Of a stretch of 64,000 bases of DNA, positions 1-60,893 are shown piece by piece. Numbering within the stretch: position 1 is the stretch's first letter; each line of letters opens with the position of its first letter. Source of the DNA: Euprymna scolopes (Eukaryota); NCBI GenBank assembly GCA_053919585.1, contig CM132803.1. One strand, 5' to 3'. The notes beneath the pieces were generated by a model. The model did not search any database. It worked only from the letters and a program-made list of their open reading frames with translations, and was not told the origin of the DNA. Both the position numbers and the translations under genes were made by a program.

Positions 1-363
1 AACATCAAAAAAGATAACAAGATCCACCTGACTTCAGCAATTATCATTGTGTCTGTAGCAGTGACAATAGCTGTGATCATTACAGCTTCAATCTCAGTGT
101 GTATCCTTCGCTGTTGCAATCCTCGAAGTGTTCCAGTAGCAGAAAGCGGATATGTGAGTAGTGGTCAGAGACATTTGATAAGTCCTCCTTACCCAGCAAA
201 TCCTTGGTCTAATGTTGCTCTTCCTACAAGTGATGCAGTTGATATGAGAAGAAGCAGTCAACCACCAACACCCAGAATGCAAACCCATCCTTACTCAAGT
301 GCTCAACAAATGCTGTCATCACAAACATCAAAGCCACAACCTATTCACGATTCTGCATCTCAA
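1..363 (+). CDS. Pcdh: Protocadherin gene 1, 3' end of large exon 2 (TM + proximal cytoplasmic region), 5'-truncated by the window
   Basis: Translates as NIKKDNKIHLTSAIIIVSVAVTIAVIITASISVCILRCC...DSASQ, near-identical to the paralogs; phase-0 donor CAA|GTAAGT at 363/364. Confidence 0.93.
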
Positions 364-4734: not shown

Positions 4735-5003
4735 ATGTGTATCCATCTCAGTATTGTAATTCACCCCCTTTACAAAATCAACAACAAACTTCTGAAATGA
4801 GGCCCTTGGGACAAACTGCCAACTACCCCAGTGATACTACTATAGTAGCTAGAGGCTTTTACACATCCTATATGAATGAAAACAGTCCTTATAATGATAC
4901 TAATACTACTAGTTCTTCTAATAGACGTTTAGCATCAAGTAATGTATCTGTTAGTGGTAGTCAGACTTCAATCAGCAGACCTCTACCACCTGTGCCACAT
5001 TAA
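4735..5003 (+). CDS. Pcdh: Protocadherin gene 1, terminal cytoplasmic exon 4
   Basis: Acceptor tttttCAG|AT; (D)VYPSQYCNSPP...YPSDTTIVARGFY...RPLPPVPH*; 163+269 nt keeps frame. Confidence 0.9.
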
Positions 5004-6056: not shown

Positions 6057-7659
6057 GTGAGTTTGCCATTAATTTATTTTCCTTCATTTTCTTTGTTAAT
6101 TAAAATGGATGAAGACGGTAGTAGAAGGATGGAAGTGCATCGGTTTTGTTATGAATGTGTGTGACTGAAATTTACTAGTGTATAGAACAAAACAGCATAA
6201 GACGATTCTCATTGTTTCATTTGGATTGTTTAATTCTCTTATTAAACTTGAAAATTATGTGGTTAAAATAAATACTATACTTAAATTTTTTCAAGTTTTT
6301 TTTATTTAACACTTAATAAAATGTTGTTCTACCAATGTTTTTTTTTTATTCTACTGCTATAGATATTCGCTAAGTCAGAAGAATCTTTTTATTAACAAAA
6401 TAATAATAAATCGTTGCTGTCTTAAGGATTAATTAATATTAATTTTTTGTTGATAAAGAGAGACTACTGACTTACAAAATAATATTATTACTAAATTTCA
6501 TGTGTGTGTATATTTTTTTTTTAAATAGTATTTTTTATCCTTTAAATCTAATTGTACACATGAAATATTTTATTTTAGAATTATTTTTTACATTTCATTT
6601 TTATTTGGATCTATTTAATTATTATTAATATTTTTTGAATATTTTTTTTTCAATTGTAAAATTTATACAATATAAAAATCAGTTGTAAAATAAAAGGATT
6701 TATAGAGTATTTTGAAATACATGTATAATTGTGAATTTATTTTAAAATCCTAGTATTTTGATCTTTTATTAATTCAAAATGTATCTAGGATTTTATCATT
6801 ATTATTTGGAGATTATTTATTTATTTATTGTGCTGCTTTTTAAAAAAAGTTATAGTATTTAAGTTTAAAATTATATTGTAATCTCCTGTATCTAAATATT
6901 AGGGTTTTTTTTCTTAAATATTTACCATCTACATGTTCTTTCATACACATCATTATCTGAAACAAGAATTTTAAGAATAATCTATTAGATTAGGATAATA
7001 ATACACATTGAGTCAATGTTGAGATAATGTTCATATATTATTTACAGTATATTGATAGCTATATAACACAAACATTTGCATTTAATAAATGATATATATT
7101 AATTAATTAAGAAAAAATATATTGAGTGGCACAAGATTATTCTTTAAATTTCACTTTTTAATGGATATTTTTTTAAGTAAAAGTTATTCATTAGATACTA
7201 CAAACAGATAATATATTTAAAAAGGAAATCGAAGTATTTTTCATTTCATGCACCTTTAAATTTCATTTATTATCTAAATGACTATTAATTTGTCCCTATT
7301 TCACAGGGTCATTTTTTACTGTTATTATCATTGATTTACATTTAAAATTCTCTTTCTCTATATAAAAAATTATGAACCATCTAATTAATTTTGACTATAT
7401 GTGTTTATTCTGCATTTACACTTTTATATAAAGATTAATTTTTAATTCAAGTAAAACTATATTCACAAACTTAAATAGAAACATATGTGATATACTTGTA
7501 TTATCATTTACTTATGAAAATTATTGAAATCATTAAAAGTGTTAGATACTTACTATTTTTTTAATACTTTTTTTTGCTTAAAATTTCAGATGTTGTAAAG
7601 AATGGAAGTGATTTTTTAGGATATTAAACAGTAAATAAAAAGATATTATTTTGGTAACA

Positions 7660-10062
7660 ATGTGGGCATCAGCATTTATTTTAATTTCAATTTCAATTGG
7701 ACATTTATGTTTTTGTGTGGACCTTACATATCATATAGAAGAAGGGAAAAGCCCTGGTACTTATATTGGAGACATTTCTTCAGATTCTCAAGTGATAAAA
7801 GATATTTCAACTGAAGATAAAAAATCTATTCAATTCAATCTTCTATTACAAGCTGAAACTGGTACGTCTCCATTATTTGATATCTCAAAGAAATCGGGAA
7901 AACTGTACACATCCCAAACTTTGGATGCTGAATCAATGTGTATTTTCAAAAAAGAATGTTTTCAAATGATTGATGTTGCTATTCAAAAAGGAACAACTGT
8001 TATTACATTATTAGAAGTCAAAGTCATCATTCAAGATATCAATGACCATCAACCTGAGTTTCCTGATAAAATTGTCAATATAGAATTTTCTGAAGATGAT
8101 AGTAAAGGAGTTAAACGATCTATACCTCATGCTGTAGATCATGATGTATCATCAATAAATTCACAAATAACTTATCAGCTGAATAAGGAACAAAATGAAC
8201 CATTTTCATTATCTGTCTCCAAAAATCTTGACGGCACATCTAAATTAGTTATTAATCTTGAAAAAAGACTTGATAGAGAAACTAAAAACTCGTACGAAAT
8301 TCAAGTAATTGCTAAAGATAGTGGTTCACCACCAAAACAAAGCATTTTAGATGTTCACGTTTCTGTTATTGATGTCAATGATAATCCACCAATCTTCTCC
8401 CAGAATATTTATAATGTTTCTATTCAAAATATACATGACAAAACAAAACCAGTTGCCATTATTTCAGCTACAGATTTAGATTCAGGTAAAAACAGTAAAA
8501 TCCAGTATCATTACAGCACAAAAACTTTGGATTTTGCAAAACAGTTATTCCAACTAAATGAAGAGAATGGTGAAATTCTTTTGAATAAGAATCCAACTTT
8601 AGGACAACAATCAACTTACGAGTTGTATGTTCAAGCAAAAGATGGAGGAAATCCTTCTTTAAGTTCTATTGCTATAGTCCACATCAATGTGATCAACCAA
8701 GAAAATAATCCACCAAAAATAAAAGTGACTTTTGTCTCCACATCATGGGACAATACAGTGGAGATTTCTGAAAACATCAAAGTAGGAAGTTTCATTGCTT
8801 ATGTGAAAGTGAGCGACCAAGATGAAGGACAGAATGGGGAAGTAAAATGTGAACTAAACCATGATAAATTTCAGCTTCGTATTATGGACAAGCAAAAATA
8901 TCAAGTAATTGTAAAAAGTACATTAGACAGAGAAAAAGAGGAACAACATGACATCATCATCATTTGTAAAGATAAAGGATCTCCTCCTTTGAAAAGTAAA
9001 AGCAGGTTCTCAATTAAAGTGACAGATTTCAATGATGTACAACCACAATTTTCTAAACAGTCATTTGAATTCTTCATTGATGAAAACCAGAGATCGAAAA
9101 TTCCTATTGGCACAATCAATGCCACAGATCCAGACTTGGGACTTGGAGGTAAACTGTCTTTTTCTTTAGTGAGCACCAATAAACAATTTGTACCATTTCG
9201 AATCACTGAAAATGGATTAATCTCTTCAATTATGTCTTTAGACCATGAGTTTCAAGATACTTATAATTTTGAAGTGTTTGTAAAAGACAAAGGAAGTCCA
9301 TCATTGAATAACACAGTGAATGTGATTGTTAAGGTGAGAGATGAAAATGATAATGCTCCATATTTCACATTTCCCAGTGTTAATCCTTATAATATGGATG
9401 TAACATATTACCCGCATCATACAAAGAACATCAGCCAGATAAAGGCATCAGACAGTGACAGTCAAGAGAATGCATTTCTAAAATATGAAATAATCAGAGG
9501 CAATAGCAAACAGATATTCAGCATCAACCAGTACACTGGTTTGTTATGTTCAACTCATGTCCTAAGCCAACAAGATGCTGGCTCATATGAGCTGGAGTTT
9601 CTAGTGAAGGACAGTGGTAGCCCAGTTCTATCAGCCAGAACTACTGTATATTTGACACTGACCGTAAGCAACAAGACATCAGAAATGTTAAATGCTGTTA
9701 ACATCAAAAAGGATAACAAGATCCACCTGACTTCAGCAATTATCATTGTGTCTGTAGCAGTGACAATAGCTGTGATCATTACAGCTTCAATCTCAGTGTG
9801 TATCCTTCGCTGTTGCAATCCTCGAAGTGTTCCAGTAGTAGAAGGTGGATACGTGAGTAGTGGTCAGAGACATTTGATAAGTCCTCCTTACCCAGCAAAT
9901 CCTTGGTCTAATGTTGCTCTTCCTACAAGTGATGCAGTTGATATGAGAAGAAGCAGTCAACCACCAACACCAAGAATGCAAACCCATCCTTACTCAAGTG
10001 CTCAACAAATGCTGTCTTCTCAAACATCAAAATCACAACCTACCCCAGATTCTGTATCTCAG
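7660..10062 (+). CDS. Pcdh: Protocadherin gene 2, exon 2 CDS (signal peptide, EC1-EC6, TM); spliced protein 947 aa
   Basis: First in-frame ATG at 7660 (the ORF track starts at TTG 7651); acceptor tttCAG| at 7589; DxNDxxP linkers, LDRE/DxD/DxG motifs, EC1 C-x5-C; donor CAG|GTAAAT. Confidence 0.95.
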
Positions 10063-10242
10063 GTAAATAATCTTTTTTTTTTTTATATTATTTTTACAAT
10101 GGATGTATTTACAATCAAAACTGTTTACTTTTATGTCTTTAAATATAAGATTTTAAATATTTAGAAAAAATATCAATGTTCCAATCAATACATTTTCTAT
10201 TTTTTTTAATTATAAATATAAGAACATAGTGTAGTTATTGTC

Positions 10243-10588
10243 ACATGTGATGGCACCGGGTATAAGGTAGAAGAGGGGACAACTAGTTATATTCTAACTA
10301 TATTCTTTTCTTATAATATTTCTCAGTATTATAACTTATATTTAAGTGTCTACGGAATACAATCAAGGAGTAGTCTGAGGGCATTTCATATATATATATT
10401 ATTAGAAATAGGGTTATTTTTTTTAATATCATTTAGAGGTTTGGTGATGTCCTAGGACAACTCGTTGATTGTATGTCTTAAACACTTAAATATAAGTCCT
10501 AGTACTGAGAAATATTATGAGAAAAGAAAATAGTTTGAATATGACTAGTTGTTTCCCTTTCCACCTCATGACTAGTGCCATCACATGT
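10243..10588. repeat. Diverged inverted repeat / foldback (MITE-like) in gene 2 intron 2
   Basis: Arms ~10243-10388 and ~10445-10588 (ACATGTGATGGCAC...GTGCCATCACATGT; TAATATTTCTCAGTA / TACTGAGAAATATTA) with many mismatches. Confidence 0.85.
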
Positions 10589-10942
10589 CTGATATATATA
10601 TATGTTAGAATTTTGTAAAAAGGATCTATCTATCTATATATATTATTTAAATCTCATTAAAATACAATAGTTGCTACCTTTCTGTATATCTCTAATGCAT
10701 TGTTAATGAGAATAATTTTATTAAGATGGTTGATAGAATTCAATTTAAAAATAATTTATTCTGAATTGGATAAAGTTGAATATATTATACAGATGCTTGC
10801 TTATTCATTTTAAATTTCTTTCACTGAATTCTATATTTCAAGTTCAGTGCAATGATGAATAACTATATAGTAAAAATCTAAATTTTGATCAAGGAATTAT
10901 CTGGAGTTCTATTAAGTCATTAAACACTGTTTCATTTTCTAG

Positions 10943-11090
10943 ATGTATATTCAAGATATTGCATTGCCAAGTGGCAGTGACAGAAGCAAGAAAAGGACAG
11001 ATAAAGCAATACAAGAATTTTCCAGACAAAGTTCTATAAAATCTTCTCAGACGAGACAAGGTTGGGAAGATTCAGGACATGATATGTCAG
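10943..11090 (+). CDS. Pcdh: Protocadherin gene 2, exon 3
   Basis: ttttcTAG|ATGTATATTCAAGAT; MYIQDIALPSGSDR...DMS; donor TCAG|GTAATA. Confidence 0.9.
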
Positions 11091-13436: not shown

Positions 13437-13729
13437 ACATGTATCCTTCACAATACTGCAATTCCCCTCCTTCACAAAGTTATCCTCAGCAGAACACAGA
13501 GATGAAGTCCTTAGAACACACTGTCAGTTATCCTAGTGATACTACTATAGTAGCTAGAGGTTTTTATACACCCTACATAAATGAAAATATTTCTCAAGCA
13601 GATTCAAAGTCTTACTCAGGTGTTGAAAGCAACAGTGGTACTTCTAGTAGACTTGTAAACTCAAGGAATTTACCTGCAAGTGGTAGTCAAATTTCTATCA
13701 ACAGGCCACTGCCTCCTGTGCCTCACTAA
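13437..13729 (+). CDS. Pcdh: Protocadherin gene 2, terminal exon 4
   Basis: tttttCAG|AC ATG TAT; YPSQYCNSPP...RPLPPVPH*; total CDS 2844 nt in frame. Confidence 0.9.
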
Positions 13730-14665: not shown

Positions 14666-15612
14666 GTAAGTTGGTATATATTGAGTTTTTTTTTTTTAAT
14701 TTCCTTTGTCTCTTTTGTCATGTAAATGATGAAAAACATTCTAAAATTGAAACTGATGAATATAATAATGGTTGCTTTGTGTATGCTAGTTATTTTGCTG
14801 ATGAAAAATTTGAATATAATGATTTATTAAGTATTTTTAGAGTCAGACTTTATTTTATACACACTTCCTTTTTCCCTTTGTATTATTTATTGTCTTTACA
14901 GTGAAATAATATAAAATATTACAAACTCAACAAATAATTGATTATCAGAATTACAATACATTTCTTTTGGCATGATTGATTTCTTGTTTTTCTGTTTCTT
15001 CTTATAGATAGGGAATTTTAACTTGATTTATAAATCAAGTTAAATACATATTTTTAGAATTACCTAATATCAAATAAAATTTACAATGATATTATATCAT
15101 CTTATATCTCAGTTTATGCTATCTTAATAGTGTTCATTTTATAAACCTAATTGTAATCATTTTTTAAAAAAATATTTACTATGACTTTTATTAGTATAAC
15201 AAATGTCTCATTCATTAGATATATTTTAAAACAAATATTTAAGGATTTATATTGATTATTATTGGTATACTTTGTTGAGTCATTAAATAATTTATTTAAC
15301 ATTGAAATAATTAAGTTTTTAACAGTGTAAAACAATCTGATAATTTTTATTTATTCATTGCAGATTTTTAAAATGTGAATCGAATGATTATGTGATCAAT
15401 TTGATTGTTCCTAACATATAATTAGAAACATTTTTAAAAGATTATAAAAATATGGTGCAATATTTTAAATTTCGTTTGAGTTATTTGAAAACACTATTAA
15501 CTAAATTAAATATTATTTCAAAAGCTATTTGTAGATGCTTAATACAATGTTTTGAATATTTGGATTTCAGAGATGGTCAGCTTATGAATGTGTGAGGGAA
15601 TTTACTTTTAAA

Positions 15613-18009
15613 ATGATGCTGAAGATTATAGGTTTAATATGTATAATGATACATATTGGACTCTGCATAGATAAAACTTACCATGTGGAAGAGGGACGAC
15701 AACCAGGTACTTATGTGGGTGATGTTGCAAGCGATTCACAAGTGATGAAGGATATTCCTGATTCTGACCACAGCCTCATTGAATTCAGTCTTCTTCATAA
15801 AGGAGCTACTGGCAATTCTCCATTATTTAAAATATCAAAAAGAACTGGAAAACTTTACACTGCACAAACATTAGATGCAGAATCACTTTGTCATTTTGAA
15901 AAGGAATGTTTTCAAATGGTGAATATAGCAGTAAGGAAATCAACAACTGTTTTCAAGCTATTAGAAATCAAAGTAATAATACAAGACATCAATGATCATC
16001 AGCCAGAGTTTCCGGATAAACAAGTAAATGTAAAATTTGATGAAGATGTATTAATTGGCACAAAAGTTTCAATTCCAAATGCTATAGACAAAGACATAGG
16101 TATTATTAATTCACAAATTACTTATGAACTAAAGAAGACAAAAGATGATCCATTCATATTGTCTACAATGAAGAAAGTTGATGGAACATCTGATCTGAGT
16201 ATAGAATCAGAAGGACTACTCAACAGGGAGATCAAAGACACTTATTCAGTTCAAGTAATTGCAAAAGATGGAGGATCCCCACAAAAACAAAGTGCATTAA
16301 CTGTTCACATTTCAATCACAGATGTAAATGATAATACACCAATATTTTCTAAAAAGGTTTATAATGTTTCTATTGACAGCAAACACAATGAAGCCAAACC
16401 AGTTGTCATATTATCTGCTAAAGATTTAGATTCTGGAGAAAATGGCAAAGTAAAATATCATATTACGGCAAAAACAACTGAAAGCACAAGAAAGATATTC
16501 GACTTAAATGAAATTAATGGAGAATTATTTCTACATAAGAAAGATACAATAAATAAGGAAATGATATACAATTTGTATGTAGAAGCAAAAGATGGAGGTA
16601 ATCCACCTCTACGATCATTAGCAAAGGTTATTGTAATGATGATGAACCAGCAGAATAAAGCTCCATTAATAGATGTAAACTTTTTCTCTACATCCAGAGA
16701 AAACACAGTTGATATTTCTGAGGACATAAAAGTTGGTAGTTTCATTGCTTATGTAAAAGTAAGTGATGAGGATGCTGGTCAGAATGGAGAGGTGAACTGT
16801 GAAATAAAACATGATAAATTTCAGCTTCAGAAGATGGGAATCCTTAAATATCAAGTAATTGTAAAAAGTCCCTTAGACCGTGAAAGAGAAGAGCATCATG
16901 ATATTATAATAATGTGTCAAGATAAAGGATCTCCTCCTTTGAAAAGTAAAAGCAAGTTCTCTGTTAAAGTGATGGATGTTAACGATGTAGAACCAGTGTT
17001 TTCTAAACAATTATTTAAATTCTTCATTGATGAAAACCAAAGATCAAAAATTCCTATTGGCACAATCAATGCCACAGATCCAGACTTGGGACTTGGAGGT
17101 AAACTGTCTTTTTCTTTAGTGAGCACCAATAAACAATTTGTACCATTTCGAATCACTGAAAATGGATTAATCTCTTCAATTATGTCTTTAGACCATGAGT
17201 TTCAAGATACTTATAATTTTGAAGTGTTTGTAAAAGACAAAGGAAGTCCATCATTGAATAACACAGTGAATGTGATTGTTAAGGTGAGAGATGAAAATGA
17301 TAATGCTCCATATTTCACATTTCCCAGTGTTAATCCTTATAATATGGATGTAACATATTACCCGCATCATACAAAGAATATCAGCCAGATAAAGGCATCA
17401 GACAGTGACAGTCAAGAGAATGCATTTCTAAAATATGAAATAATCAGAGGCAATAGCAAACAGATATTCAGCATCAACCAGTACACTGGTTTGTTATGTT
17501 CAACTCATGTCCTAAGCCAACAAGATGCTGGCTCATATGAGCTAGAGTTTCTAGTGAAGGACAGTGGTAGCCCAGTTCTATCAGCCAGAACTACTGTATA
17601 TTTGAGACTGACCGTGAGCAACAAGACATCAGAAATGTTAAATGCTGTTAACATCAAAAAAGATAACAAGATCCACCTGACTTCAGCAATTATCATTGTG
17701 TCTGTAGCAGTGACAATAGCTGTGATCATTACAGCTTCAATCTCAGTGTGTATCCTTCGCTGTTGCAATCCTCGAAGTGTTCCAGTAGCAGAAGGCGGAT
17801 ATGTGAGTAGTGGTCAGAGACATTTGATAAGTCCTCCTTACCCAGCAAATCCTTGGTCTAATGTTGCTCTTCCTACAAGTGATGCAGTTGATATGAGAAG
17901 AAGCAGTCAACCACCAACACCCAGAATGCAAACCCATCCTTATTCAAGTGCTCAACATATGCTGTCTTCTCAAGCATCAAAGCCACAGCCAGTTTCAGTG
18001 TCATCTGAG
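15613..18009 (+). CDS. Pcdh: Protocadherin gene 3, exon 2 CDS; spliced protein 945 aa
   Basis: ATG at 15613 (MMLKIIGLICIMIHIGLC signal peptide); acceptor at 15570; six cadherin repeats and TM; donor GAG|GTAGGT. Confidence 0.95.
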
Positions 18010-18350
18010 GTAGGTTTATTTGCATTTAATCTTTATTATTGCAAATTTGTATATTTCATATAATATTAGTATGTTTATTTTAGCATCTTTATTTAAATAA
18101 GTATACATCTGCTACTTTTTACTTCTGTACTTTTGTTTATTCTAGTTTTTTAATGTTAATATTAACAAAATTTTTTCAATCTTTTTAAAATTGATTATGT
18201 TTATTGAAAGTACCGTATGTCATTTTAAGTACGCACTGTTTTTATTTTTGCTCTGTCAAATATTGCATTTTGACTTGTATATTTTTTGTTGTACTTTATA
18301 TGTTTAACTGCTTTTATCATTTCATAAATTATGATTTTCATTTGATTTAG

Positions 18351-18510
18351 ATGTATAATCAAGATATAGCACTGCCATCTAATAGTAATAGAAAAGACAA
18401 AAGGACAGGCAGAATACAAGAATATTCCAGTAGAAGTTCAATAAAATCTCACCTTGATGACAGGCAAGGATGGAACAATGAAAACTCAAGACAGGCTGAG
18501 GTTGCGTCAG
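18351..18510 (+). CDS. Pcdh: Protocadherin gene 3, exon 3
   Basis: tttAG|ATGTATAATCAAGAT; MYNQDIALPSNSNRKDKRTGRIQEYSS...VAS; donor TCAG|GTAAAC. Confidence 0.9.
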
Positions 18511-19435
18511 GTAAACTACATATTTTTCTATATTTTGCTTAATCTTTTATAATAATAATGCTGAATATTATTAATATTATAACTTAATTAATTAATGGTT
18601 GAATGCAAAATATTTTACTTTGATTCTTGCAGTACATTAAGTATTAATTAAACATATTACTGACACAATTAGAAACATATATATTCAGATAAACAGTAGG
18701 GTATAGATTGGTACATCCCAAACTTGATTTCCTGTCAATATAATTACTTAAATCATACATGGGTAATGATATTATATTAAGAGCTATTAAGTAAATCGAT
18801 CAAAAATACAATTAAATAACTTCAAATAGCAAATGTTGGAAGTGTTGAGTTGGAGAAACATTTCAAATAGACTAAGTGCCTCATTTAGCACCATAGCATA
18901 TTTTTGTTTTGAAATGAAAATGTAACCCGTAGATCATGACATGTTTTGGCCAGCCTATTCATGGATGAATAAGTCTGGTCACACTCGGTTGATGTAGGTA
19001 TTCTATGGATACGATGGGATTGGCTTAGTGAGCACGATTGTCTGATGATAGGACAAATATCTGTTTTATAATTTGTGAATAATCATAGTTTTTCAGAGTT
19101 ATAGCAATATTTATCTCCCCTTCTCAGATGTATAATGTTGTCTAGTAAGATAGTTTGTAATTAATATTGGTTTAGAGAATCCAGTGAGATTGCTAGAATA
19201 CAGATGCCCATCTCTATTTGCATAAAGCCGTTATATCCTAGTCATGAAATGTTAGTATTTAACACATGAAAAACAATTAGGACTGACTGAATGGAAAATT
19301 TGTTTTTCTCCAGTTTGTCCAGAAATAGAGAATATGTCATTAATGACTTTCCCATTTAACTGCTAACTTTCTGACTGAAATCAATGTCACATTTGACATA
19401 CCAAAATATCTCCCCTATCCCTTTTGCATCCCTCC

Positions 19436-19523
19436 ATACATTTGCTCGCTCACTGATGAAGATGATACATTTGCTCTCTCACTGATGAAGATGATACATT
19501 TGCTCTCTCACTGATGAAGATGA
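19436..19523. repeat. 29-bp tandem repeat x3
   Basis: ATACATTTGCTCTCTCACTGATGAAGATG starting at 19436, 19465 and 19494. Confidence 0.9.
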
Positions 19524-20049
19524 AACTTTTGTTTGAATCTAAGGAAAAAAATTTTTAAATCCTATAAAATTATTTTAAATTAAATTTAACTGCTTGTTTT
19601 TATCTCTTTATTTTGCTTAAACAAAATATTAATTTATACTTAGAAAACAGATTTTACAAGACATTCTTGTCTCCTTTTATTTTGATTTTTAATAATCATA
19701 TTGCCTTTATGATCATTCTGATGAAGATATCAACTTCACCATGGGAGGTTTATCAATCAGTGTTCCTTACTAGGACTGAGGACCCTAGCATGGAAAGGGG
19801 AGTAACTTTGAGAATTCTTTCTTTTCATTAATACTAATAAATGCATTACTAGTTAATTTTTTTCTTAACTTTTTAAATTTTCTATTTTATTTCTTAACTC
19901 TGTTTCCCATTACACTTATCTGAGTTCACCATTTGATCTAATCATTGCAATAAAATGTTGATTCAGTCCAATTTCTTTATTACACAAAAAGACAAGAACT
20001 ACTCACAAAATTCTTTGAAATGGTTTTCCTAAAAAGATATTTTACAGAG

Positions 20050-20900
20050 TTACAAGGCAAATGGAAAGAAAAAAAAACTTTGGAGACTCAAGATGTATTG
20101 ATGGCTGCAAAAACTTCTATCAGCAATAAACTACACAAGCATGGCCTTATATGGCATTGTCTAAAGAAAAAGATGCTCTGCTAAACAAATAGAGAGGCTT
20201 GATTGGAATTAAGTCATGAATATTTAGGTGAGCAAAAAAGGTTTTGTGAGATAAAAAATGAATTATTTGGAAAAAATTGAACTTATTAGATACCATCCAA
20301 AGAATACCATCCATAGTGTAAGGTTTGCTGGTGGAAGCATTATGGTATGGAAGTGTTTTTCTGATCATGATACTGCAACAGTAGTACAATAGTAGTAGGT
20401 ACTATGAATAGAGTGAATAGAGTGATGTATTACAGTATTTTAGCCATTCCTGGATATGACATTAAACTATATCCAGTGGTGAGGCCCCAGCTTGTGGGCT
20501 TTGGGGAGTGTGGAGCCACCCTTTAATTGACATTGCTCCGAGGTCCACTCAGACCCGGAGTGGTAGTACCTGTTAGGATACCAACTATGGGTTAAATAGA
20601 AACCGACTTGAAAACAACAAATATATTCTATTAAAAATTTTTTCTTTAAAATCACTGGATTCGGCATTAAATAACCTGAAAAGGGTTGATATGCTGTAAA
20701 ACAACCAACCAACCAACCAACTACAGTATTTTAGAAAAAAATCCGTTCACCTCCACCCAACAGTTGAGCTCATTTTGAACAACATAATGATTTAAAATAC
20801 ACTGCTCTTAATTTGAGCTCAAAATGGTTTACAAAGAACAAGATCAAAGTACTATAAAAGGCAGATCTGAATCTAATTCAAAATTTGTGACAACAAATTG
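20050..20900 (+). mobile_element. Tc1-family transposase remnant interrupted by a SINE
   Basis: VRFAGGSIMVWKCFS (~20320; Tc1 TVKHGGGSIMVWGCF), FEQHNDLKYT (~20775; FQQDNDPKHT), DLNLIQNL (~20865; SPDLNPIENLW). Confidence 0.75.
20444..20721 (+). mobile_element. SINE-like retroposon insertion with a 13-bp target-site duplication
   Basis: Exact TSD TACAGTATTTTAG at 20431-20443 and 20722-20734; 3' (CAAC)n tail. Confidence 0.85.
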
Positions 20901-22199
20901 AAAATTCTAATTTTATTTAAAAGCATAAGAAGCATAGTTGAATTAAAGAGTATTCCCTTATTTTGGCCTTTAGTCATCTCATTTCATGAGTGATGTTTCT
21001 GACAAAAGGGGAAAAATTGCTGTTTTCTGTATCAAAATCTATTGATATAACATTTATCATTGGCTAGTTTTTGACCTTGAAGTGTTTTTTAACTCCAGAC
21101 ATCAAGTAGCTTCATGTCTTGTCTAGAATAATTTCTATAGATAAAAATAAAAGTTAAGTTGCAAAGAGTTTGTAGACAATAATAACAAGCATGTTTTAAC
21201 CAAGAATGTATTAAGTTATGAAAACTGGTATATATAAATATTTTTTTTACTAGCAAAGTAAAAAATTGGATTTTTAAAGTTTTGTTGTAAATTGATCATG
21301 ATACATATTAACTAATTAATTGGAAAGAACTCATCTTTTTGCCATTGTTGGTTAGTTTGTTCATCTTCTGATTGTTTCAAAATTAGTTCATTTATTTTTC
21401 CTGAAACTTTTCATGAAAATTATATGATCATGAGCGCAGAAACTGAGACTTTTTTCAGTAAAATTTGTATTTGTCCTTTAAAAAATTAAAATGTCCCAAA
21501 ATCTGCATTTTTGCATCTTTCTAAAATTTCCTTAATTTGCCTTTGCTCAAAAATAATTTAATGGTCATTTATATGAATCAAACATTGGCGATCCTATAAA
21601 AACTTTGATTTATCCCAATATCTAAAATGCCATTTATTAGATTTTATCTCTCCAAAATCTACCAACAGTTGTGATTAACAATTATTTTTATATATATATA
21701 TATTTTATTCAAGTATTTCTAATCTTAAGAAAATATTCATTTTCCTCTCATGATGTTGACATTGCTTTTCCAAATTAACAAAAAATACAATTTTTCTTTT
21801 CTCACATTTATTAGAAATTTCCTTCATTATTTTTATTTTACAAAATTTACCAAAATTTTATGGTCACTGGTTCTTTACATAAATCAAACACTGATCACCT
21901 GAGGAAAAATATGGTTTTCTATTCTAGTGATGCAAAAATGCTTTAGCATTGGTAAAATTTGTAATTTTTTAAAATATCTAAACTCCCAGTTTTTAACTTT
22001 TGTTCCTTCCAAACAAGGCATATTGCCACTGAAATATAAGGAGATACTGTGATAAGGGCCAAATTTATAGAGGAGCAACATACATGTGAACTTGGGTAGC
22101 AAGATCTTTGTTCATATTATATTTAAATTTCTGCATATTGATACAGTTAACAAAAATAGGGAGGAAATTCCAAAGACAAGTAGTCCAATGAAAGAAGCT

Positions 22200-25100: not shown

Positions 25101-25409
25101 ATGAGTTGTTAATATTTTGTGACAGAATGTTATTAAATTTACCCAATTTTCTGATTAATAATTATTTACATGATTCAATTACTGATGATAACAGGAAATC
25201 TCAGGAAGATAAAATATATATACCACCTCTAAACAAATGGTTTAAAAAAGCAATATTTCACAATACTTGAGTTATTCTCCCCCAATTCAACCAGAACTTA
25301 CAAAAAATGTTTATTCAAGTAGTGGTTAAGGGCATAAATGTTTTACTTGTTAAATACGATCGCTTTTCTCATTTTTATAGTTAATTAATTTTTATTTTAT
25401 ATCTTGCAG

Positions 25410-27708: not shown

Positions 27709-30102
27709 ATGCTAAACAAAATATTTCTGCTGGTTTGGATCATAAAAGCTTGTATGTGTACAGATCTTACATACAATGTGGAAGAAGGGAAAAGTCCAGA
27801 TATTTATGTTGGTGATGTTGCTGCTGATTCACATGTGATGAAGGATATTGCTGAGTCTGACCATAAACTAATCGGATTCAGCCTTCTTCATAAAGGGGCT
27901 ACTGCGAATTCTCCATTATTTAGAATATCGAAAGGGACTGGAAAACTATACACTGCACAAACATTAGATGCAGAATCTCTTTGTATTTATAAAAAAGAAT
28001 GTTTTCAGATGGTTGATGTTGCAGTTAGAAAATCAACAACTGTTTTCAAGTTATTAGAAATAAAAGTAATAATACAGGACATCAATGATCATCAGCCAGA
28101 GTTTCCTGATAAACAAATTACTATTGAATTTGAAGAAGGAGATGGTAAAGGTATGAAAAGATCAATTCCAAATGCCATAGACAAAGATGTAGGAATCACT
28201 AATTCACAAATTACTTATGAACTAAAAAAGACCAAAGATGAACCTTTCATATTGTCTACAATGAAAAAAATTGATGGAACATCTGATCTGAGTATAGAAT
28301 TAGAAAGAATGTTAAACAGAGAAGTCAAAGACTCATATAAAATTCAAGTAATTGCAAAAGATGGAGGATCACCACCAAAACAAAGTGTATTGACTGTTCA
28401 CATTTCAATCACAGATGTAAATGATAATAAACCAATATTTTCTAAAAAGGTTTATAATGTTTCTATTGACAGCAAACATAATGAAGCCAAACCAGTTGTC
28501 ATATTATTTGCTAAAGATTTAGATTCTGGAGAAAATGGCAAAGTAAAATATCATATTACGGCAAAAACAACTGAAAGTACAAGAAAGATTTTTGATTTAA
28601 ATGAAATTACTGGAGAATTATTTCTACATAAAAAAGACATATTAAATAAGGAAGTAATATATGAATTATATGTAGAAGCGAGAGATGGAGGTAATCCACC
28701 TTTACGATCATTAGCAATGGTTTTTGTAAATGTTATGAACCAGCAAAATAAAGCTCCATTAATAGATGTGAACTTTTTTTCCACATCCAGAGAAAATACA
28801 GTTGATGTTTCTGAAAACATAAAAGTTGGTAGTTTCATTGCTTATGTAAAAGTAAGTGATGAGGATGCTGGTCAGAATGGAGAGGTGAACTGTGAAATAA
28901 AACATGATAAATTTCAATTGCAAAACATGGGAACCAAGAAATACCAAGTGATAGTGAAAACTCTTTTAGACAGGGAAATTGAAGATCATCACAGTATAAT
29001 TATCAAATGTCAAGACAAAGGATCTCCTCCTCTTCAAAGCAAAAGGACATTTTCTGTACATGTGATTGATGTTAATGATGTACAACCAGTGTTTTCTAAA
29101 CAATTATTTAAATTCTTCATTGATGAAAACCAGAGATCGAAAATTCCTATTGGCACAATCAATGCCACAGATCCAGACTTGGGACTTGGAGGTAAACTGT
29201 CTTTTTCTTTAGTGAGCACCAATAAACAATTTGTACCATTTCGAATCACTGAAAATGGATTAATCTCTTCAATTATGTCTTTAGACCATGAGTTTCAAGA
29301 TATTTATAATTTTGAAGTGTTTGTAAAAGACAAAGGAAGTCCATCATTGAATAACACAGTGAATGTGATTGTTAAGGTGAGAGATGAAAATGATAATGCT
29401 CCATATTTCACATTTCCCAGTGTTAATCCTTATAATATGGATGTAACATATTACCCGCATCATACAAAGAACATCAGCCAGATAAAGGCATCAGACAGTG
29501 ACAGTCAAGAGAATGCATTTCTAAAATATGAAATAATCAGAGGCAATAGCAAACAGATATTCAGCATCAACCAGTACACTGGTTTGTTATGTTCAACTCA
29601 TGTCCTAAGCCAACAAGATGCTGGCTCATATGAGCTGGAGTTTCTAGTGAAGGACAGTGGTAGCCCAGTTCTATCAGCCAGAACTACTGTATATTTGACA
29701 CTGACTGTAAGCAACAAGACATCAGAAATGCTAAATGCTGTTAACATCAAAAAAGATAACAAGATTCACCTGACTTCAGCAATTATCATTGTGTCTGTAG
29801 CAGTGACAATAGCTGTGATCATTACAGCTTCAATCTCAGTGTGTATCCTTCGCTGTTGCAATCCTCGAAGTGTTCCAGTAGCAGAAAGCGGATATGTGAG
29901 TAGTGGTCAGAGACATTTGATAAGTCCTCCTTACCCAGCAAATCCTTGGTCCAATGTTGCTCTTCCTACAAGTGATGCAGTTGATATGAGAAGAAGCAGT
30001 CAACCACCAACACCCAGAATGCAAACCCATCCTTACTCAAGTGCTCAACAAATGCTGTCTTCTCAAACAACAAAACCCCAATTGCTTAACGATTCATCTG
30101 AG
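27709..30102 (+). CDS. Pcdh: Protocadherin gene 4, exon 2 CDS; spliced protein 945 aa
   Basis: ATG 27709; acceptor atttCAG| at 27662; six EC repeats and TM; donor GAG|GTAGGT. Confidence 0.95.
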
Positions 30103-34474: not shown

Positions 34475-34524
<50 letters not shown>

Positions 34525-50708: not shown

Positions 50709-53102
50709 ATGGTACTAAAGGAATTATTTGTACTGGTTTGGATGATAAATGCTTGTATGTGTACAGATTTTACATATAATGTGGAAGAAGGAAAAAGTCC
50801 AGATATTTATGTTGGTGATGTTGCTGCTGATTCACATGTGATTAAGGATATTGCTGAGTCTGACCATAAACTCATTGGATTCAGCCTTCTTCATAAAGGG
50901 GCTACTGCGAATTCTCCATTATTTAGAATATCGAAAAGAACTGGAAAACTATACACTGCACAACCATTAGATGCAGAATCTCTTTGTATTTATAAAAAAG
51001 AATGTTTTCAGATGGTGGATGTTGCAGTTAGAAAATCAACAACTGTTTTCAAGTTATTAGAAATCAAAGTAATAATACAGGATATCAATGATCATCAGCC
51101 AGAGTTTCCGGATAAACAAGTTAATGTGAAATTTAATGAAGATGTTGCCATAGGAACTAAAGTATCAATACCAAATGCTATAGACAAAGATGTAGGAATC
51201 ATTAATTCCCAAATTACTTATGAACTAAAAAATACCAAAGATGAACCTTTCATATTATCTACAATGAAGAAAATTGATGGAACAACTGATCTGAGTATAG
51301 AATTAAAACGACTTCTCAACAGAGAAAACAAGGATTCTTATACAATTCAAGTAATTGCAAAAGATGGAGGATCCCCACCAAAACAAAGTGCATTAACTGT
51401 TCACATTTCAATCACAGATGTAAATGATAATGCACCAATATTTTCTAAAAAGGTTTATAATGTTTCTATTGACAGCAAACACAATGAAGCCAAACCAGTT
51501 GTCATATTATCTGCTAAAGATTTAGATTCTGGAGAAAATGGTAAAGTAAAATATCATATTACGGCAAAAACAACTGAAAGCACAAGAAAGACATTTCATT
51601 TAAATGAAATTACTGGAGAATTATTTTTAAATAAAAAAGACATATTAAATAAGGAAGTAATATATGAATTATATGTAGAAGCGAGAGATGGAGGTAATCC
51701 ACCTTTACGATCATTAGCCATGGTTTTTGTAAATGTTATGAACCAGCAAAATAAAGCTCCATTAATAGATGTGAACTTTTTTTCCACATCCAGGGAAAAT
51801 ACAGTTGATGTTTCTGAAAATATAAAAGTTGGTAGTTTCATTGCTTATGTGAAAGTAAGTGATGAGGATGCTGGTCAGAATGGAGAAGTGAACTGTGAAA
51901 TAAAACATGATAAATTTCAATTGCAAAACATGGGAACCAAGAAATACCAAGTTATAGTGAAAACTCTTTTAGACAGGGAAACTGAAGATCATCACAGTAT
52001 AATTATCAAATGTCAAGACAAAGGATCTCCTCCTCTTCAAAGCAAAAGGACATTTTCTGTACATGTGATTGATGTTAATGATGTAGAACCAGTGTTTTCT
52101 AAACAATTATTTAAATTCTTCATTGATGAAAACCAGAGATCGAAAATTCCTATTGGCACAATCAATGCCACAGATCCAGACTTGGGACTTGGAGGTAAAC
52201 TGTCTTTTTCTTTAGTGAGCACCAATAAACAATTTGTACCATTTCGAATCACTGAAAATGGATTAATCTCTTCAATTATGTCTTTAGACCATGAGTTTCA
52301 AGATACTTATAATTTTGAAGTGTTTGTAAAAGACAAAGGAAGTCCATCATTGAATAACACAGTGAATGTGATTGTTAAGGTGAGAGATGAAAATGATAAT
52401 GCTCCATATTTCACATTTCCCAGTGTTAATCCTTATAATATGGATGTAACATATTACCCGCATCATACAAAGAACATCAGCCAGATAAAGGCATCAGACA
52501 GTGACAGTCAAGAGAATGCATTTCTGAAATATGAAATAATCAGAGGCAATAGCAAACAGATATTCAGCATCAACCAGTACACTGGTTTGTTATGTTCAAC
52601 TCATGTCCTAAGCCAACAAGATGCTGGCTCATATGAGCTGGAGTTTCTAGTGAAGGACAGTGGTAGCCCAGTTCTATCAGCCAGAACTACTGTATATTTG
52701 ACACTGACCGTAAGCAACAAGACATCAGAAATGTTAAATGCTGTTAACATCAAAAAAGATAACAAGATCCACCTGACTTCAGCAATTATCATTGTGTCTG
52801 TAGCAGTGACAATAGCTGTGATCATTACAGCTTCAATCTCAGTGTGTATCCTTCGCTGTTGCAATCCTCGAAGTGTTCCAGTAGCAGAAGGCGGATATGT
52901 GAGTAGTGGTCAGAGACATTTGATAAGTCCTCCTTACCCAGCCAATCCTTGGTCTAATGTTGCTCTTCCTACAAGTGATGCAGTTGATATGAGAAGAAGC
53001 AGTCAACCACCAACACCCAGAATGCAAACACATCCTTACTCAAATGCTCAACAAATGCTGTCATCTCAAGCACCAAAACCAGCTTCAGACTCTATTTCTC
53101 AG
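50709..53102 (+). CDS. Pcdh: Protocadherin gene 6, exon 2 CDS; spliced protein 940 aa
   Basis: ATG 50709; acceptor at 50655; six EC repeats and TM; donor CAG|GTAATA. Confidence 0.95.
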
Positions 53103-58513: not shown

Positions 58514-60893
58514 ATGATGACAAGACTAGCATTTTTCCTACTTTCTGTTTTGCACATTTCATTCTGTGTGGACCTTACATATCATATAGAAGAAGGGAAA
58601 AGCCCTGGTGCTTATATTGGAGACATTTCTTCAGATCCTCAAGTGATAAAAGACATTTCAACTGAAGATAAAAAATCTATTCAGTTCAATCTTCTATTAC
58701 AAGCTGAAACTGGTACGTCTCCATTATTTGATATCTCAAAGAAATCGGGAAAACTGTACACATCCCAAACTTTGGATGCTGAATCAATGTGTATTTTCAA
58801 AAAAGAATGTTTTCAAATGATTGATGTTGCTATTCAAAAGGGAACAACTGTTATTACATTATTAGAAGTCAAAGTCATCATTCAAGATATCAATGACCAT
58901 CAACCTGAGTTTCCTGATAAGCAGATTAAAATTAATTTGAATGAGGATGTAAAAAAAGGAACAAAAGTTTTAATTCCCAATGCTATAGATCAAGATGTCA
59001 GTGTGAGAAATTCCAAAATTAAGTATGAACTACAAACACATAAACAGGAACCATTTACATTATTGGTTTCAAAGAATCTTGATGAATCTTCAAAACTTCA
59101 ACTAACTCTAAATGAAGAACTTGACAGGGAAACTAAAAATTTATATAACATTCAAGTAATTGCTAAAGATAGTGGTTTACCACCAAAACAAAGCATTTTA
59201 GATGTTCACGTTTCTGTTATTATTCTTCTCCCAGAATATTTATAATGTTTCTATTCAAAATATACATGACAAAACAAAACCAGTTGCCATTATTTCAGCT
59301 ACAGATTTAGATTCAGGTAAAAACAGTAAAATCCAGTATCATTACAGCACAAAAACTCTGGATTTTGCAAAACAGTTATTCCAACTAAATGAAGAGAATG
59401 GTGAAATTCTTTTGAATAAGAATCCAACTTTAGGACAACAATCAACTTACGAGTTGTATGTTCAAGCGAAAGATGGAGGAAATCCTTCTTTAAGTTCTAT
59501 TGCTATAGTCCACATCAATGTGATCAACCAAGAAAATAATCCACCAAAAATAAAAGTGACTTTTGTCTCCACATCATGGGACAATACAGTGGAGATTTCT
59601 GAAAACATCAAAGTAGGAAGTTTCATTGCTTATGTGAAAGTGAGCGACCAAGATGAAGGACAGAATGGGGAAGTAAAATGTGAACTAAACCATGATAAAT
59701 TTCAGCTTCGTATTATGGACAAGCAAAAATATCAAGTAATTGTAAAAAGTACATTAGACAGAGAAAAAGAGGAACAACATGACATCATCATCATTTGTAA
59801 AGATAAAGGATCTCCTCCTTTGAAAAGTAAAAGCAGGTTCTCAATTAAAGTGACAGATTTCAATGATGTACAACCACAATTTTCTAAACAGTCATTTGAA
59901 TTCTTCATTGATGAAAACCAAAGATCGAAAATTCCTATTGGCACAATCAATGCCACAGATCCAGACTTAGGACTTGGAGGTAAACTGTCTTTTTCTTTAG
60001 TGAGCACCAATAAACAATTTGTACCATTTCGCATCACTGAAAATGGATTAATCTCTTCAATTATGTCTTTAGACCATGAGTTTCAAGATACTTATAATTT
60101 TGAAGTGTTTGTAAAAGACAAAGGAAGTCCATCATTGAATAACACAGTGAATGTGATTGTTAAGGTGAGAGATGAAAATGATAATGCTCCATATTTCACA
60201 TTTCCCAGTGTTAATCCTTATAATATGGATGTAACATATTACCCGCATCATACAAAGAACATCAGCCAGATAAAGGCATCAGACAGTGACAGTCAAGAGA
60301 ATGCATTTCTAAAATATGAAATAATCAGAGGCAATAGCAAACAGATATTCAGCATCAACCAGTACACTGGTTTGTTATGTTCAACTCATGTCCTAAGCCA
60401 ACAAGATGCTGGCTCATATACGCTGGAGTTTCTAGTGAAGGACAGTGGTAGCCCAGTTCTATCAGCCAGAACTACTGTATATTTGACACTGACCGTAAGC
60501 AACAAGACATCAGAAATGTTAAATGCTGTTAACATCAAAAAAGATAACAAGATCCACCTGACTTCAGCAATTATCATTGTGTCTGTAGCAGTGACAATAG
60601 CTGTGATCATTACAGCTTCAATCTCAGTGTGTATCCTTCGCTGTTGCAATCCTCGAAGTGTTCCAGTAGCAGAAGGCGGATATGTGAGTAGTGGTCAGAG
60701 ACATTTGATAAGTCCTCCTTACCCAGCCAATCCTTGGTCTAATGTTGCTCTTCCTACAAGTGATGCAGTTGATATGAGAAGAAGCAGTCAACCACCAACA
60801 CCCAGAATGCAAACTCATCCTTACTCAAGTGCTCAACAAATACTATCTTCTCAAGGATCAAAACCACAACCAGCCTCAAATGATGCATCGCAG
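58514..60893 (+). pseudogene. Pcdh: Protocadherin gene 7, exon 2, frameshifted by a 20-bp deletion at ~59221 (recent pseudogene, null allele or assembly error)
   Basis: Relative to gene 2 it lacks GATGTCAATGATAATCCACC (the DVNDNPP linker), which splits the CDS into ORFs 58514-59245 and 59202-60938. The rest is intact, with donor CAG|GTAGGA at 60893. Tail exons were not found before the window end. Confidence 0.8.

What the first reader, a model, noticed from the sequence alone, without database searches (positions are those of the whole stretch)
9068..10023. A 956-bp EC5-EC6-TM-juxtamembrane block is nearly identical in every paralog: a constant region kept by homogenisation rather than by shared exons
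Seen: the block from AATTCTTCATTGATGAAAACC to ...TCWCAA has the same length (956 nt) at 9068, 17018, 29111, 38718, 52114 and 59899, and its 3' part is at 1-324. Copies differ by only scattered substitutions, even at synonymous sites. Immediately outside the block, EC1-EC4, the last ~10 codons of exon 2, introns and tail exons diverge sharply. Known: vertebrate clustered Pcdhs obtain a constant part from shared exons, use EC5-EC6 for promiscuous cis-dimerisation and EC1-EC4 for specific trans recognition, and show domain-restricted gene conversion. Inference: this independently expanded cluster reaches the same variable/constant logic through ongoing gene conversion, which could let any isoforms cis-assemble. 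By eye the block also looks more GC-rich than EC1-EC4.
Basis: partly seen in the sequence, partly recalled or inferred. Interest (0 to 1): 0.9.

Follow-up and report, generated by a model that had tools for sequence, protein, structure and literature searches.

The report
Homogenised constant block in squid-type protocadherins
In a tandem array of cephalopod protocadherin genes, the 956 bases encoding the two membrane-proximal cadherin domains, the membrane span and the start of the tail are kept about 99% identical in every copy by ongoing gene conversion, the same trick already known from fish protocadherin clusters but here in an independently expanded invertebrate family.

Summary
The 956-nt block sits at all six stated positions, and its last 324 nt are at 1-324. 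All 15 pairs differ at only 10-17 sites (98.2-99.0% identity). EC1-EC4 differ by 5-32%, and the last ~12 codons and the introns cannot be aligned.

Synonymous divergence is 0.034-0.065 in the block and up to 1.3-1.65 in EC1-EC4. Protein constraint therefore cannot explain the identity.

Trees conflict. EC1-EC4 place g1 and g2-g5 with different genes of another decapodiform assembly. The block unites all window genes (100/100), and AU tests reject each region's grouping on the other region.

An independent DNA run shows block 31-mers at about 20 times single-copy depth, so this is not an assembly artefact. Runs labelled as three other organisms carry their own differences in the high-depth block contig, which means variants spread through the array.

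Each gene has its own tail exons, one junction being confirmed by RNA, so there are no shared constant exons.

The recent duplication unit runs from block to block, so the block also hosts unequal crossing-over.

This closely parallels the regional conversion known in fugu and zebrafish. I class it as a new member of a known kind. The proposed cis-assembly role is untested.

The parts
1..324 (+). 3' 324 nt of the block of gene g0; the gene begins before the window
   Evidence: Aligns to block positions 633-956 with 3 differences from the consensus.
9068..10023 (+). Homogenised block of g1 (EC5, EC6, transmembrane helix and about 85 juxtamembrane residues)
   Evidence: Pfam Cadherin starts at residue 468 of the g3 protein, which is the block start. 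Residues 4-197 align to EC5-EC6 of PDB 5V5X and 6E6B.
17018..17973 (+). Homogenised block of g2
29111..30066 (+). Homogenised block of g3
38718..39673 (+). Homogenised block of g4
52114..53069 (+). Homogenised block of g5
59899..60854 (+). Homogenised block of g6. The reading frame of g6 is broken upstream by a 20-nt deletion near 59200.
7660..10062 (+). Large exon of g1 (signal peptide, EC1-EC6, TM, juxtamembrane). The 3' end is confirmed by RNA.
   Evidence: ORF; first ATG. RNA contigs end at 10062 and continue with the sequence found at 10943.
15613..18009 (+). Large exon of g2; the donor GT after 18009 is inferred
27709..30102 (+). Large exon of g3. An RNA contig reads on past the g3 donor (30102) into letters that are not the g3 intron.
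   Evidence: The loose end CCCCAATTGCTTAACGATTCATCTGAG+ATG has its start located at 30076.
37316..39709 (+). Large exon of g4; donor inferred
50709..53102 (+). Large exon of g5; donor inferred
58514..60893 (+). Large exon of g6, frameshifted by a 20-nt deletion at the EC2/EC3 linker
10943..11090 (+). First tail exon of g1 (MYIQDIALPS...). Counterparts start at 514, 18351, 33803, 47007 and 54238. These are gene-specific and 72-81% alike. The 3' end is approximate.
13437..13729 (+). Terminal coding exon of g1 (...SDTTIVARGFYTPY...RPLPPVPH, then stop). Counterparts lie at about 4735-5003 (g0), 25396-25690 (g2), 35233-35527 (g3), 48596-48884 (g4) and 56018-56283 (g5). Coordinates are approximate.
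   Evidence: Mean pairwise identity is 80%. The exons of g2, g3 and g4 are 95.6-97% alike.

Best explanation
The window holds seven head-to-tail protocadherin genes of a decapodiform cephalopod (squid or cuttlefish lineage). The part of the large exon that encodes EC5, EC6, the transmembrane helix and about 85 juxtamembrane residues evolves in concert. Homology-dependent recombination between misaligned tandem paralogs repeatedly copies this roughly 1-kb tract from one gene to another (interlocus gene conversion). As a result all copies of the sub-array, about 20 in the genome, stay about 99% identical even at synonymous sites. Their EC1-EC4 regions, introns and tail exons keep much older and separate histories. 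The same intermediates sometimes resolve as unequal crossovers inside the block, which is how the array gained its most recent members. The tract edges are probably held in place because the flanks are too diverged to support heteroduplex extension. On the EC1-EC4 side, homogenisation would also erase recognition diversity. The shown steps are the block's near-identity and low dS, the conflict between trees, the multi-copy depth in independent reads, the organism-specific differences in the high-depth block contig, the gene-specific tail exons, and the block-to-block duplication unit. The inferred steps are the molecular recombination pathway, what fixes the boundaries, and the functional pay-off. 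That pay-off would be a common membrane-proximal module allowing promiscuous cis-association or shared signalling among isoforms of one array, as in vertebrate clustered protocadherins.
For: Block dS is 0.034-0.065 (mean 0.047, star-like). EC1-4 dS is 0.14-1.65, and 1.3-1.65 for g1/g6 against g2-g5. Block dN is about 0.005.

The post-block codons and introns are unalignable. Tail exons are only 66-87% alike, apart from those of g2-g4.

The EC1-4 tree gives (g1,(P0007,P0014)) at 100/100 and (g2,P0001,(g5,(g3,g4))) at 100/99. Forcing the window genes together costs 273 lnL (p-AU 0.0003). In the block tree the window genes form one clade at 100/100, and the EC1-4 groupings are rejected (p-AU 0.0003 and 6e-5).

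In an independent 2019 DNA run of the same organism label, contigs in EC1-4 have word depth 26-34 and block contigs 547-720.

In runs of organism labels E, F and G, the g1 EC3-EC4 region is at single-copy depth and 2.6-3.8% diverged. The block is at 11-20 times that depth. It carries differences of its own in the high-depth contig: 9096 G>A in E, 9096 G>T in G, and 9103, 9165, 9166 and 9176 in F. The window's g2 carries the E variant at 9096.

Shared sites 23, 596 and 830 show all four gametes within the block.

GC3 is 0.31 in the block and 0.20 in EC1-4.

The frameshifted copy g6 still carries a homogenised block.

The heads of g3, g4 and g5 are 94-95% alike, while the terminal exons of g2, g3 and g4 are 95.6-97% alike. 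This offset by one gene means the duplication breakpoints lie in the block.
Against: No long read spanning a whole gene could be examined. The reads available were short-read contigs, which break inside the repeat.

The private single-copy variants of g1 (9711, 9839, 9846, 9852, 9972) were not seen in any laid contig. The exact 1-2% differences between copies are therefore unverified.

No DNA could be fetched for the other assembly, so the deeper cross-species comparison is at protein level only.

The block consensus is almost unchanged between the related organisms, while single-copy EC3-EC4 differ by about 3%. This fits slow turnover in a 10-50-copy family, but it could also reflect some extra constraint on synonymous sites.

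GC3 enrichment is modest and strongest in EC6 only.

Nothing here tests cis-dimerisation.
Confidence: 0.9

Rival explanations
1. Assembly or polishing artefact: the copies really differ, but the assembler or polisher collapsed the repeat onto one consensus.
For: The block is a repeat of about 1 kb in an AT-rich genome. The g1-specific variants were not recovered in independent contigs. No long reads were available.
Against: Short-read contigs from an independent run of the same organism label, and from four other organism labels, carry the block sequence at 11-50 times the depth of the neighbouring EC3-EC4. Many genomic copies therefore share exact 31-mers in the raw data. The assembled copies keep distinct private substitutions, and each joins in frame to a different EC4 and a different 3' end. 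Several arrays of an unrelated assembly show the same profile.
Confidence: 0.02
2. Pure constraint: the block is an ancient sequence frozen by selection. The selection could act on the protein or on the nucleotides, for example on RNA structures needed for A-to-I editing, which is heavy in cephalopod neural transcripts (my own knowledge, not tested here).
For: Block dN is very low, with dN/dS about 0.1. The block consensus is nearly unchanged among closely related organisms.
Against: A frozen sequence would give a block tree congruent with EC1-4 but with short branches. Instead the trees conflict with full support. The block does evolve: it differs by 7-10% at the amino-acid level from the nearest array of another assembly and by 32-43% from other arrays. 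Runs of related organisms carry differences of their own in the high-depth contig. Protein-level selection cannot hold 210 synonymous sites at dS 0.05 while neighbouring sites reach 1.3 or more.
Confidence: 0.03
3. Very recent whole-gene duplications followed by accelerated, positively selected divergence of EC1-EC4 only.
For: g3, g4 and g5 are indeed recent duplicates (EC1-4 dS 0.14-0.15), with alignable intergenic DNA.
Against: Positive selection does not raise synonymous divergence to saturation, yet dS is 1.3-1.65 for g1/g6 against g2-g5. Introns and flanks of those genes are unalignable. Domain-level dN/dS in EC1-4 is about 0.2, not above 1. The EC1-4 lineages predate the split from another organism. 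Even among the recent duplicates the block (dS 0.034-0.044) is younger than EC1-4 (0.14-0.15).
Confidence: 0.02
4. Unequal crossing-over alone, without non-crossover conversion, homogenises the array.
For: The block-to-block duplication unit shows that crossovers do occur in the block.
Against: Crossovers homogenise whole repeat units. Here both flanks of the block remain old and different in g1, g2, g5 and g6, which needs two exchanges per event, i.e. conversion tracts. g1 and g6 share EC1 and EC3-EC4 at 0-1% divergence, but have unrelated flanks and a different EC2.
Confidence: 0.03

Closest known systems
Regional gene conversion in teleost clustered protocadherins (fugu: Yu et al. 2007, PMC1852091; zebrafish and human: Noonan et al. 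2004, cited there and in PMC4978886, not held in the library)
   Same: The 3' part of each large ectodomain exon is more than 99% identical among neighbouring paralogs, while the 5' part is 60-80% identical. A discrete boundary lies in EC4 or EC5. Identity extends to synonymous sites. GC3 is raised in the converted part. Each subcluster has its own homogenised sequence, which differs strongly from that of other subclusters. EC2-EC3 escape conversion (PMC1852091 section 7; PMC4978886). All of these were found here.
   Different: This is an independent, invertebrate expansion with no shared constant exons at all, so the converted block is the only constant part of the protein. GC3 rises only to about 0.31 (about 0.41 in EC6), against over 0.50 in fugu. 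The tract here ends 33-39 nt before the end of the exon rather than running to it.
Vertebrate clustered protocadherin constant region (alpha and gamma clusters: variable exons spliced to three shared constant exons)
   Same: The outcome is a family of isoforms with a variable recognition part and a common C-terminal part. The large exon encodes six EC repeats, the TM and a short cytoplasmic stretch.
   Different: The constant part here is not produced by splicing. Every gene has its own tail exons. This agrees with Albertin et al. 2022 (PMC9068888), who state that cephalopods do not splice diverse first exons to shared final exons. In addition, the constant part here is mostly extracellular (EC5-EC6) plus the TM, not the distal cytoplasmic domain.
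Cephalopod protocadherin sub-arrays (Albertin et al. 2022, PMC9068888; Styfhals et al. 2019, PMC6339937)
   Same: [quoted passage not shown] Both papers mention recent duplication or gene conversion as possible reasons for the similarity.
   Different: In the passages I read, conversion is offered only as a general possibility for whole genes. I found no description there of a domain-restricted tract, its boundaries, dS contrasts or tree conflict. My literature search was limited to the held library.
Classical concerted evolution of tandem arrays (for example rDNA, histone and U2 snRNA arrays; my own knowledge)
   Same: Paralogs within a genome are more alike than orthologues between genomes. 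Variants spread through the array. Conversion and unequal crossing-over act together.
   Different: Only an internal segment of a coding exon is homogenised, while the rest of each unit is kept diverse.

Membership tests
Protocadherin (six-EC, single-pass, large-exon type) | Six extracellular cadherin repeats with an N-terminal Cadherin_2-type EC1 | tested here: met
   Pfam: Cadherin (5 stretches, E 7.5e-75) plus Cadherin_2 at residues 21-106. The closest named homologues are cuttlefish PCDH models.
Protocadherin (six-EC, single-pass, large-exon type) | Ectodomain, transmembrane helix and start of the tail encoded by one large exon | tested here: met
   Uninterrupted ORFs of 802-837 codons. 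A hydrophobic stretch LTSAIIIVSVAVTIAVIITASISVCIL follows EC6. The RNA-supported donor is at 10062.
Vertebrate-style clustered Pcdh locus with shared constant exons | All variable exons splice to one shared set of constant exons | tested here: not met
   Each gene is followed by its own first tail exon and its own terminal exon. These are 66-87% alike, except for the recently duplicated trio. RNA contigs join 10062 to 10943 within the g1 unit.
Regional gene conversion / concerted evolution of Pcdh exons (teleost type) | Near-identity of the 3' region that includes synonymous sites, against a divergent 5' region | tested here: met
   dS 0.047 against up to 1.65. Differences are 1.0-1.8% against 5-32%, with Fisher p from 6e-7 to 1e-93.
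Regional gene conversion / concerted evolution of Pcdh exons (teleost type) | Discrete boundary in EC4/EC5 | tested here: met
   Identity jumps at 9025-9067, directly after the EC4-EC5 linker DVNDVxPxF. EC5 starts at the block start.
Regional gene conversion / concerted evolution of Pcdh exons (teleost type) | Conflict between the trees of converted and unconverted parts; paralogs closer than orthologues in the converted part | tested here: met
   AU tests p 6e-5 to 3e-4 in both directions. The block clade of window genes has 100/100 support.
Regional gene conversion / concerted evolution of Pcdh exons (teleost type) | Raised GC3 in the converted part (GC-biased conversion) | tested here: met
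   GC3 is 0.30-0.32 against 0.19-0.23, p 1e-4. The rise is modest and concentrated in EC6 at 0.40-0.43.
Regional gene conversion / concerted evolution of Pcdh exons (teleost type) | Spread of new variants through the array within a lineage | tested here: met
   Organism-specific differences in the high-depth block contigs at 9096, 9103, 9165, 9166 and 9176. Caveats: contigs drop rare variants, and the organism labels are coded.
Promiscuous cis-dimerisation module (vertebrate cPcdh EC5-EC6) | EC5-EC6 mediates cis-association between different isoforms | not testable with these tools
   Only homology is shown. Block residues 4-197 align to EC5-EC6 of gammaB7 EC3-6 (5V5X, E 2.5e-49) and gammaB4 (6E6B).

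The most novel reading that the evidence does not exclude
Every decapodiform protocadherin sub-array maintains its own private 'constant region' (EC5-EC6-TM) by conversion, and blocks of different arrays are only about 57-68% alike. The arrays would then be separate cis-compatibility or signalling groups, functional analogues of the vertebrate alpha, beta and gamma clusters that arose convergently without constant exons. The block would also be the recombination hub that both expands the arrays and reshuffles ectodomains onto different tails. A corollary is that published 'species-specific' or 'array-specific' clades of cephalopod protocadherins are partly artefacts of this homogenisation, and that EC1-EC4 trees would reveal much older orthology.
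Probability: 0.3. Interest if true: 0.8.

Novelty: new member of a known kind. Interest (0 to 1): 0.6.

Why it matters
Cephalopods and vertebrates expanded protocadherins independently, and how the cephalopod proteins work is unknown.

This result shows that the cephalopod arrays impose the same architecture as vertebrate clusters: a variable EC1-EC4 and a constant EC5-EC6-TM. They do so by the same evolutionary device seen in teleosts. That makes a concrete prediction about which part recognises and which part assembles.

There is also a practical consequence. Full-length trees of cephalopod protocadherins will group genes by array and species because of the converted half. Orthology and the timing of expansions should therefore be inferred from EC1-EC4 only, as was done for fugu.

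Finally, the block-to-block duplication unit identifies the substrate of array growth.

Tried and rejected
DNA of the related arrays was not available. Four look-ups for contigs of ERZ21867824 and for the cuttlefish assembly returned gene lists but no DNA. Synonymous-site tests could therefore not be repeated in another genome.

No long-read runs were offered. Only short-read contigs and two short-read raw runs of 2026 were listed, so no spanning-read test was possible.

Tails of cuttlefish gene models did not locate the tail exons. Self-comparison of the intergenic DNA did locate them.

I first took the conserved element about 2 kb upstream of each gene for a promoter or first exon. Its alignment shows an acceptor, an open frame and a stop, so it is the terminal exon of the preceding gene.

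Noonan 2004 and Albertin 2015 are not held in the library. I cite them only through papers that describe them.

The scan's earlier notes hold nothing on this topic.

The rival explanations I rejected (artefact, pure constraint, recent duplication with fast divergence, crossover only) are set out in their own section.
Full report
**What is in the window.** Seven protocadherin genes lie head to tail on the + strand. I call them g0 to g6.
- g0 contributes only the 3' end of its large exon (1-363) and its tail exons.
- g1-g5 have large ORFs at 7651-10164, 15592-18063, 27709-30150, 37316-39763 and 50709-53117.
- g6 is split into two ORFs (58514-59245 and 59202-60938) by a 20-nt deletion at the EC2/EC3 linker.

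Pfam finds an N-terminal Cadherin_2 domain plus five Cadherin repeats. The best named relatives are PCDH models of the cuttlefish Acanthosepion pharaonis at about 60% identity. The organism is therefore a decapodiform cephalopod.

- The start motif occurs exactly at the six stated coordinates, and each copy is 956 nt long without indels.
- There are 36 variable sites, mostly singletons, and 26 are at third codon positions. The 15 pairs differ at 10-17 sites.
- Window 1-324 is the last 324 nt of a seventh copy.
- In 60-nt windows, mean pairwise identity is 0.64-0.89 through EC1-EC4 and 0.97-1.00 from 9080 to 9980. It is about 0.5, i.e. no alignment, from 10040 onward.
- For every pair the block is significantly less diverged than EC1-4, with Fisher p from 6e-7 to 1e-93.
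- The GC impression is also right: GC 0.38 against 0.31-0.325, and GC3 0.30-0.32 against 0.19-0.23. EC6 is highest at 0.40-0.43.

**Domain content.** The best Pfam Cadherin match starts at residue 468 of g3, which is the first residue of the block. It lies directly after the EC4-EC5 linker DVNDVxPxF. Block residues 4-197 align to EC5-EC6 of solved vertebrate protocadherins: 5V5X residues 223-425 (E 2.5e-49) and 6E6B residues 430-632. A 27-residue hydrophobic helix follows, and then about 85 cytoplasmic residues. The block ends 33-39 nt before the splice donor.

**The identity is not protein constraint.** Nei-Gojobori dS in the block is 0.034-0.065 for all pairs (mean 0.047). The pattern is star-like. 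In EC1-EC4, dS is:
- 0.14-0.15 among g3-g5;
- about 0.41 for g2 against g3-g5;
- 1.3-1.65 for g1/g6 against g2-g5.

Block dN is about 0.005, so purifying selection acts on top, but it cannot hold 210 synonymous sites.

**The block and the variable part have different histories.** I aligned g1-g5 with 20 proteins from another decapodiform assembly (ENA ERZ21867824). The window's own ORFs are absent from that collection, so it is another organism.
- On EC1-4, g1 groups with P0007 and P0014 (100/100), and g2-g5 group with P0001 (100/99). Forcing the window genes together costs 273 log-likelihood units (p-AU 0.0003).
- On the block, the five window genes form one clade (100/100). The two EC1-4 groupings are rejected (p-AU 0.0003 and 6e-5).
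- In identities, g1 is 85% like P0007 and 63% like g2 in EC1-4, but 92% and 99% respectively in the block.

This is the standard signature of concerted evolution. It rules out both a frozen ancient block and recent duplication with fast divergence of EC1-4.

**The block is not an assembly artefact, and homogenisation is ongoing.**
- In an independent DNA run with the same organism label (X4, 2019), contigs over g1's EC1-4 have word depth 26-34 and block contigs 547-720. About 20 genomic copies therefore share exact 31-mers.
- In DNA runs with four other organism labels, g1's EC3-EC4 is at single-copy depth. In three of them (E, F and G) it differs from the window by 2.6-3.8% (13/467, 26/689 and 8/312). 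In all four the block is at 11-50 times that depth and matches the consensus of the window copies almost exactly.
- Those runs also carry differences of their own in the high-depth block contig: 9096 G>A in E, 9096 G>T in G, and 9103, 9165, 9166 and 9176 in F.
- The E variant at 9096 is the letter that only g2 carries in the window. The same variant is thus rare in one array and dominant in another.
- Shared sites 23, 596 and 830 show all four gametes within the block.
- Read contigs that leave the block at 9493, or enter it at 9267, 9297, 9338, 9465 or 9572, indicate paralogs outside the window that share only part of it.

Three caveats apply. These are short-read contigs that drop rare variants. 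The organism labels are coded. g1's private variants were not recovered.

**There are no shared constant exons.** RNA contigs end at 10062 and continue with the sequence at 10943. This gives an 880-nt intron inside the g1 unit. Every gene has its own first tail exon (MY[INV]QD[IV]ALPS..., starting at 514, 10943, 18351, 33803, 47007 and 54238) and its own terminal exon (...SDTTIVARGFYTPY...RPLPPVPH, then stop) about 1.8-2.7 kb upstream of the next gene. These exons are 66-87% alike apart from one recently duplicated trio. Conversion therefore does not reach them. This agrees with the statement of Albertin et al. 2022 (PMC9068888) that cephalopods do not splice to shared final exons.

**The variable part is itself a mosaic.**
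- g1 and g6 differ by 0-1% through EC1 (7740-8010) and EC3-EC4 (8280-9068), but by 18-41% in EC2 (8011-8280). Their flanks are unrelated. This points to recent long conversions between genes 50 kb apart that left EC2 different.
- g2 is nearly identical to g3-g5 at 8326-8500 and around 8776-8865, between stretches 13-28% diverged.
- Conversion therefore occurs along the whole exon between sufficiently similar genes. Only in the block does it embrace all copies.

**The block is also the crossover site.** The EC1-4 'heads' of g3, g4 and g5 are 93-95% alike. The terminal exons of g2, g3 and g4 are 95.6-97% alike, while g5's is only 76-78% like them. The intergenic DNA of these three intervals is alignable over up to 2.2 kb. 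The recent duplication unit therefore runs from one block, through tail exons and spacer, to the next gene's EC4. This is what unequal crossing-over inside the block would produce. Even among these recent duplicates the block (dS 0.034-0.044) is younger than the heads (0.14-0.15).

**Generality.** In the other assembly, seven groups of paralogs, each group sharing a contig, show the same profile. Amino-acid identity is 94-100% from about residue 430-476 to 726-750, against 45-80% in much of EC1-4. Blocks of different arrays are only 57-68% alike to the window's block. EC1-4 relatives on one contig (P0008-13 and P0015-19) carry different blocks. This is protein-level evidence only.

**Comparison with what is known.** The fugu clusters show the same thing. 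The 3' regions of variable exons are more than 99% identical among neighbouring paralogs, the boundary lies in EC4 or EC5, GC3 is raised, and the homogenised sequences are subcluster-specific (Yu et al. 2007, PMC1852091). Zebrafish, human and other vertebrates show lower dS in EC5-EC6 than in EC2-EC3 (PMC4978886, citing Noonan et al. 2004).

For cephalopods, the papers I could read offer gene conversion only as a general possibility (PMC9068888, PMC6339937). I found no domain-restricted analysis in the held library. I therefore class this as a new member of a known kind: the same mechanism and the same domain logic, reached in an independent expansion that lacks constant exons.

**What remains inference.**
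- That the tract edges are set by flank divergence and by selection for EC1-4 diversity.
- That GC enrichment reflects biased conversion. The private substitutions are 21 GC-to-AT against 10 AT-to-GC by my count, which implies a mutational equilibrium GC near 0.23. This is close to EC1-4 GC3 and below the block's.
- That the constant EC5-EC6-TM module serves promiscuous cis-assembly, as in vertebrates.

None of these could be tested with the tools at hand.

Noticed in passing
window 59150-59260 (g6): g6 has a 20-nt deletion at the EC2/EC3 linker relative to g1. The deletion removes the DVNDNPP codons and shifts the frame, so g6 looks like a pseudogene. RNA contigs nevertheless run from shared EC1 sequence into g6's own signal-peptide region (58535), and its block is still homogenised.
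   Followed up: partly
window 8011-8280 against 58880-59150: g1 and g6 are near-identical except for EC2, which is 18-41% diverged. This is a natural 'EC2 swap' between otherwise identical ectodomains. I did not look for the donor of g6's EC2.
   Followed up: partly
window 18009-27708, 30102-37315, 39709-50708: The recent tandem duplication unit is offset by one gene. The tails of g2, g3 and g4 match one another, and the heads of g3, g4 and g5 match one another. The breakpoints therefore lie in the homogenised block.
   Followed up: yes
window 4735-5003, 13437-13729, 25396-25690, 35233-35527, 48596-48884, 56018-56283: There is a conserved terminal coding exon with the motifs YPSQYCNPPP, SDTTIVARGFYTPYMNE and SGSQTSINRPLPPVPH followed by a stop. 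The last motif is proline-rich and might be a docking site; no match to vertebrate CM motifs was sought.
   Followed up: no
window 7759, 7833, 7989, 8101 (g1 EC1-EC2): RNA contigs read G where the window has A. At 8101 the DNA run shows A while two of the three RNA runs show G. This could be A-to-I editing or a polymorphism; no DNA and RNA pair from the same individual was checked.
   Followed up: no
window 9493 and 9267-9572 (read contigs): Contigs from several organisms leave or enter the block at internal points and continue with sequence absent from the window, for example GTGCAGGCAATGAGAAACAG after 9493. Paralogs elsewhere in the genome therefore share only part of the block.
   Followed up: no
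window 9839-9852 (g1 block): Three g1-private substitutions fall within 14 nt (9839, 9846, 9852). This could be a micro-conversion from a diverged donor or an assembly error. They were not seen in any laid contig.
   Followed up: partly
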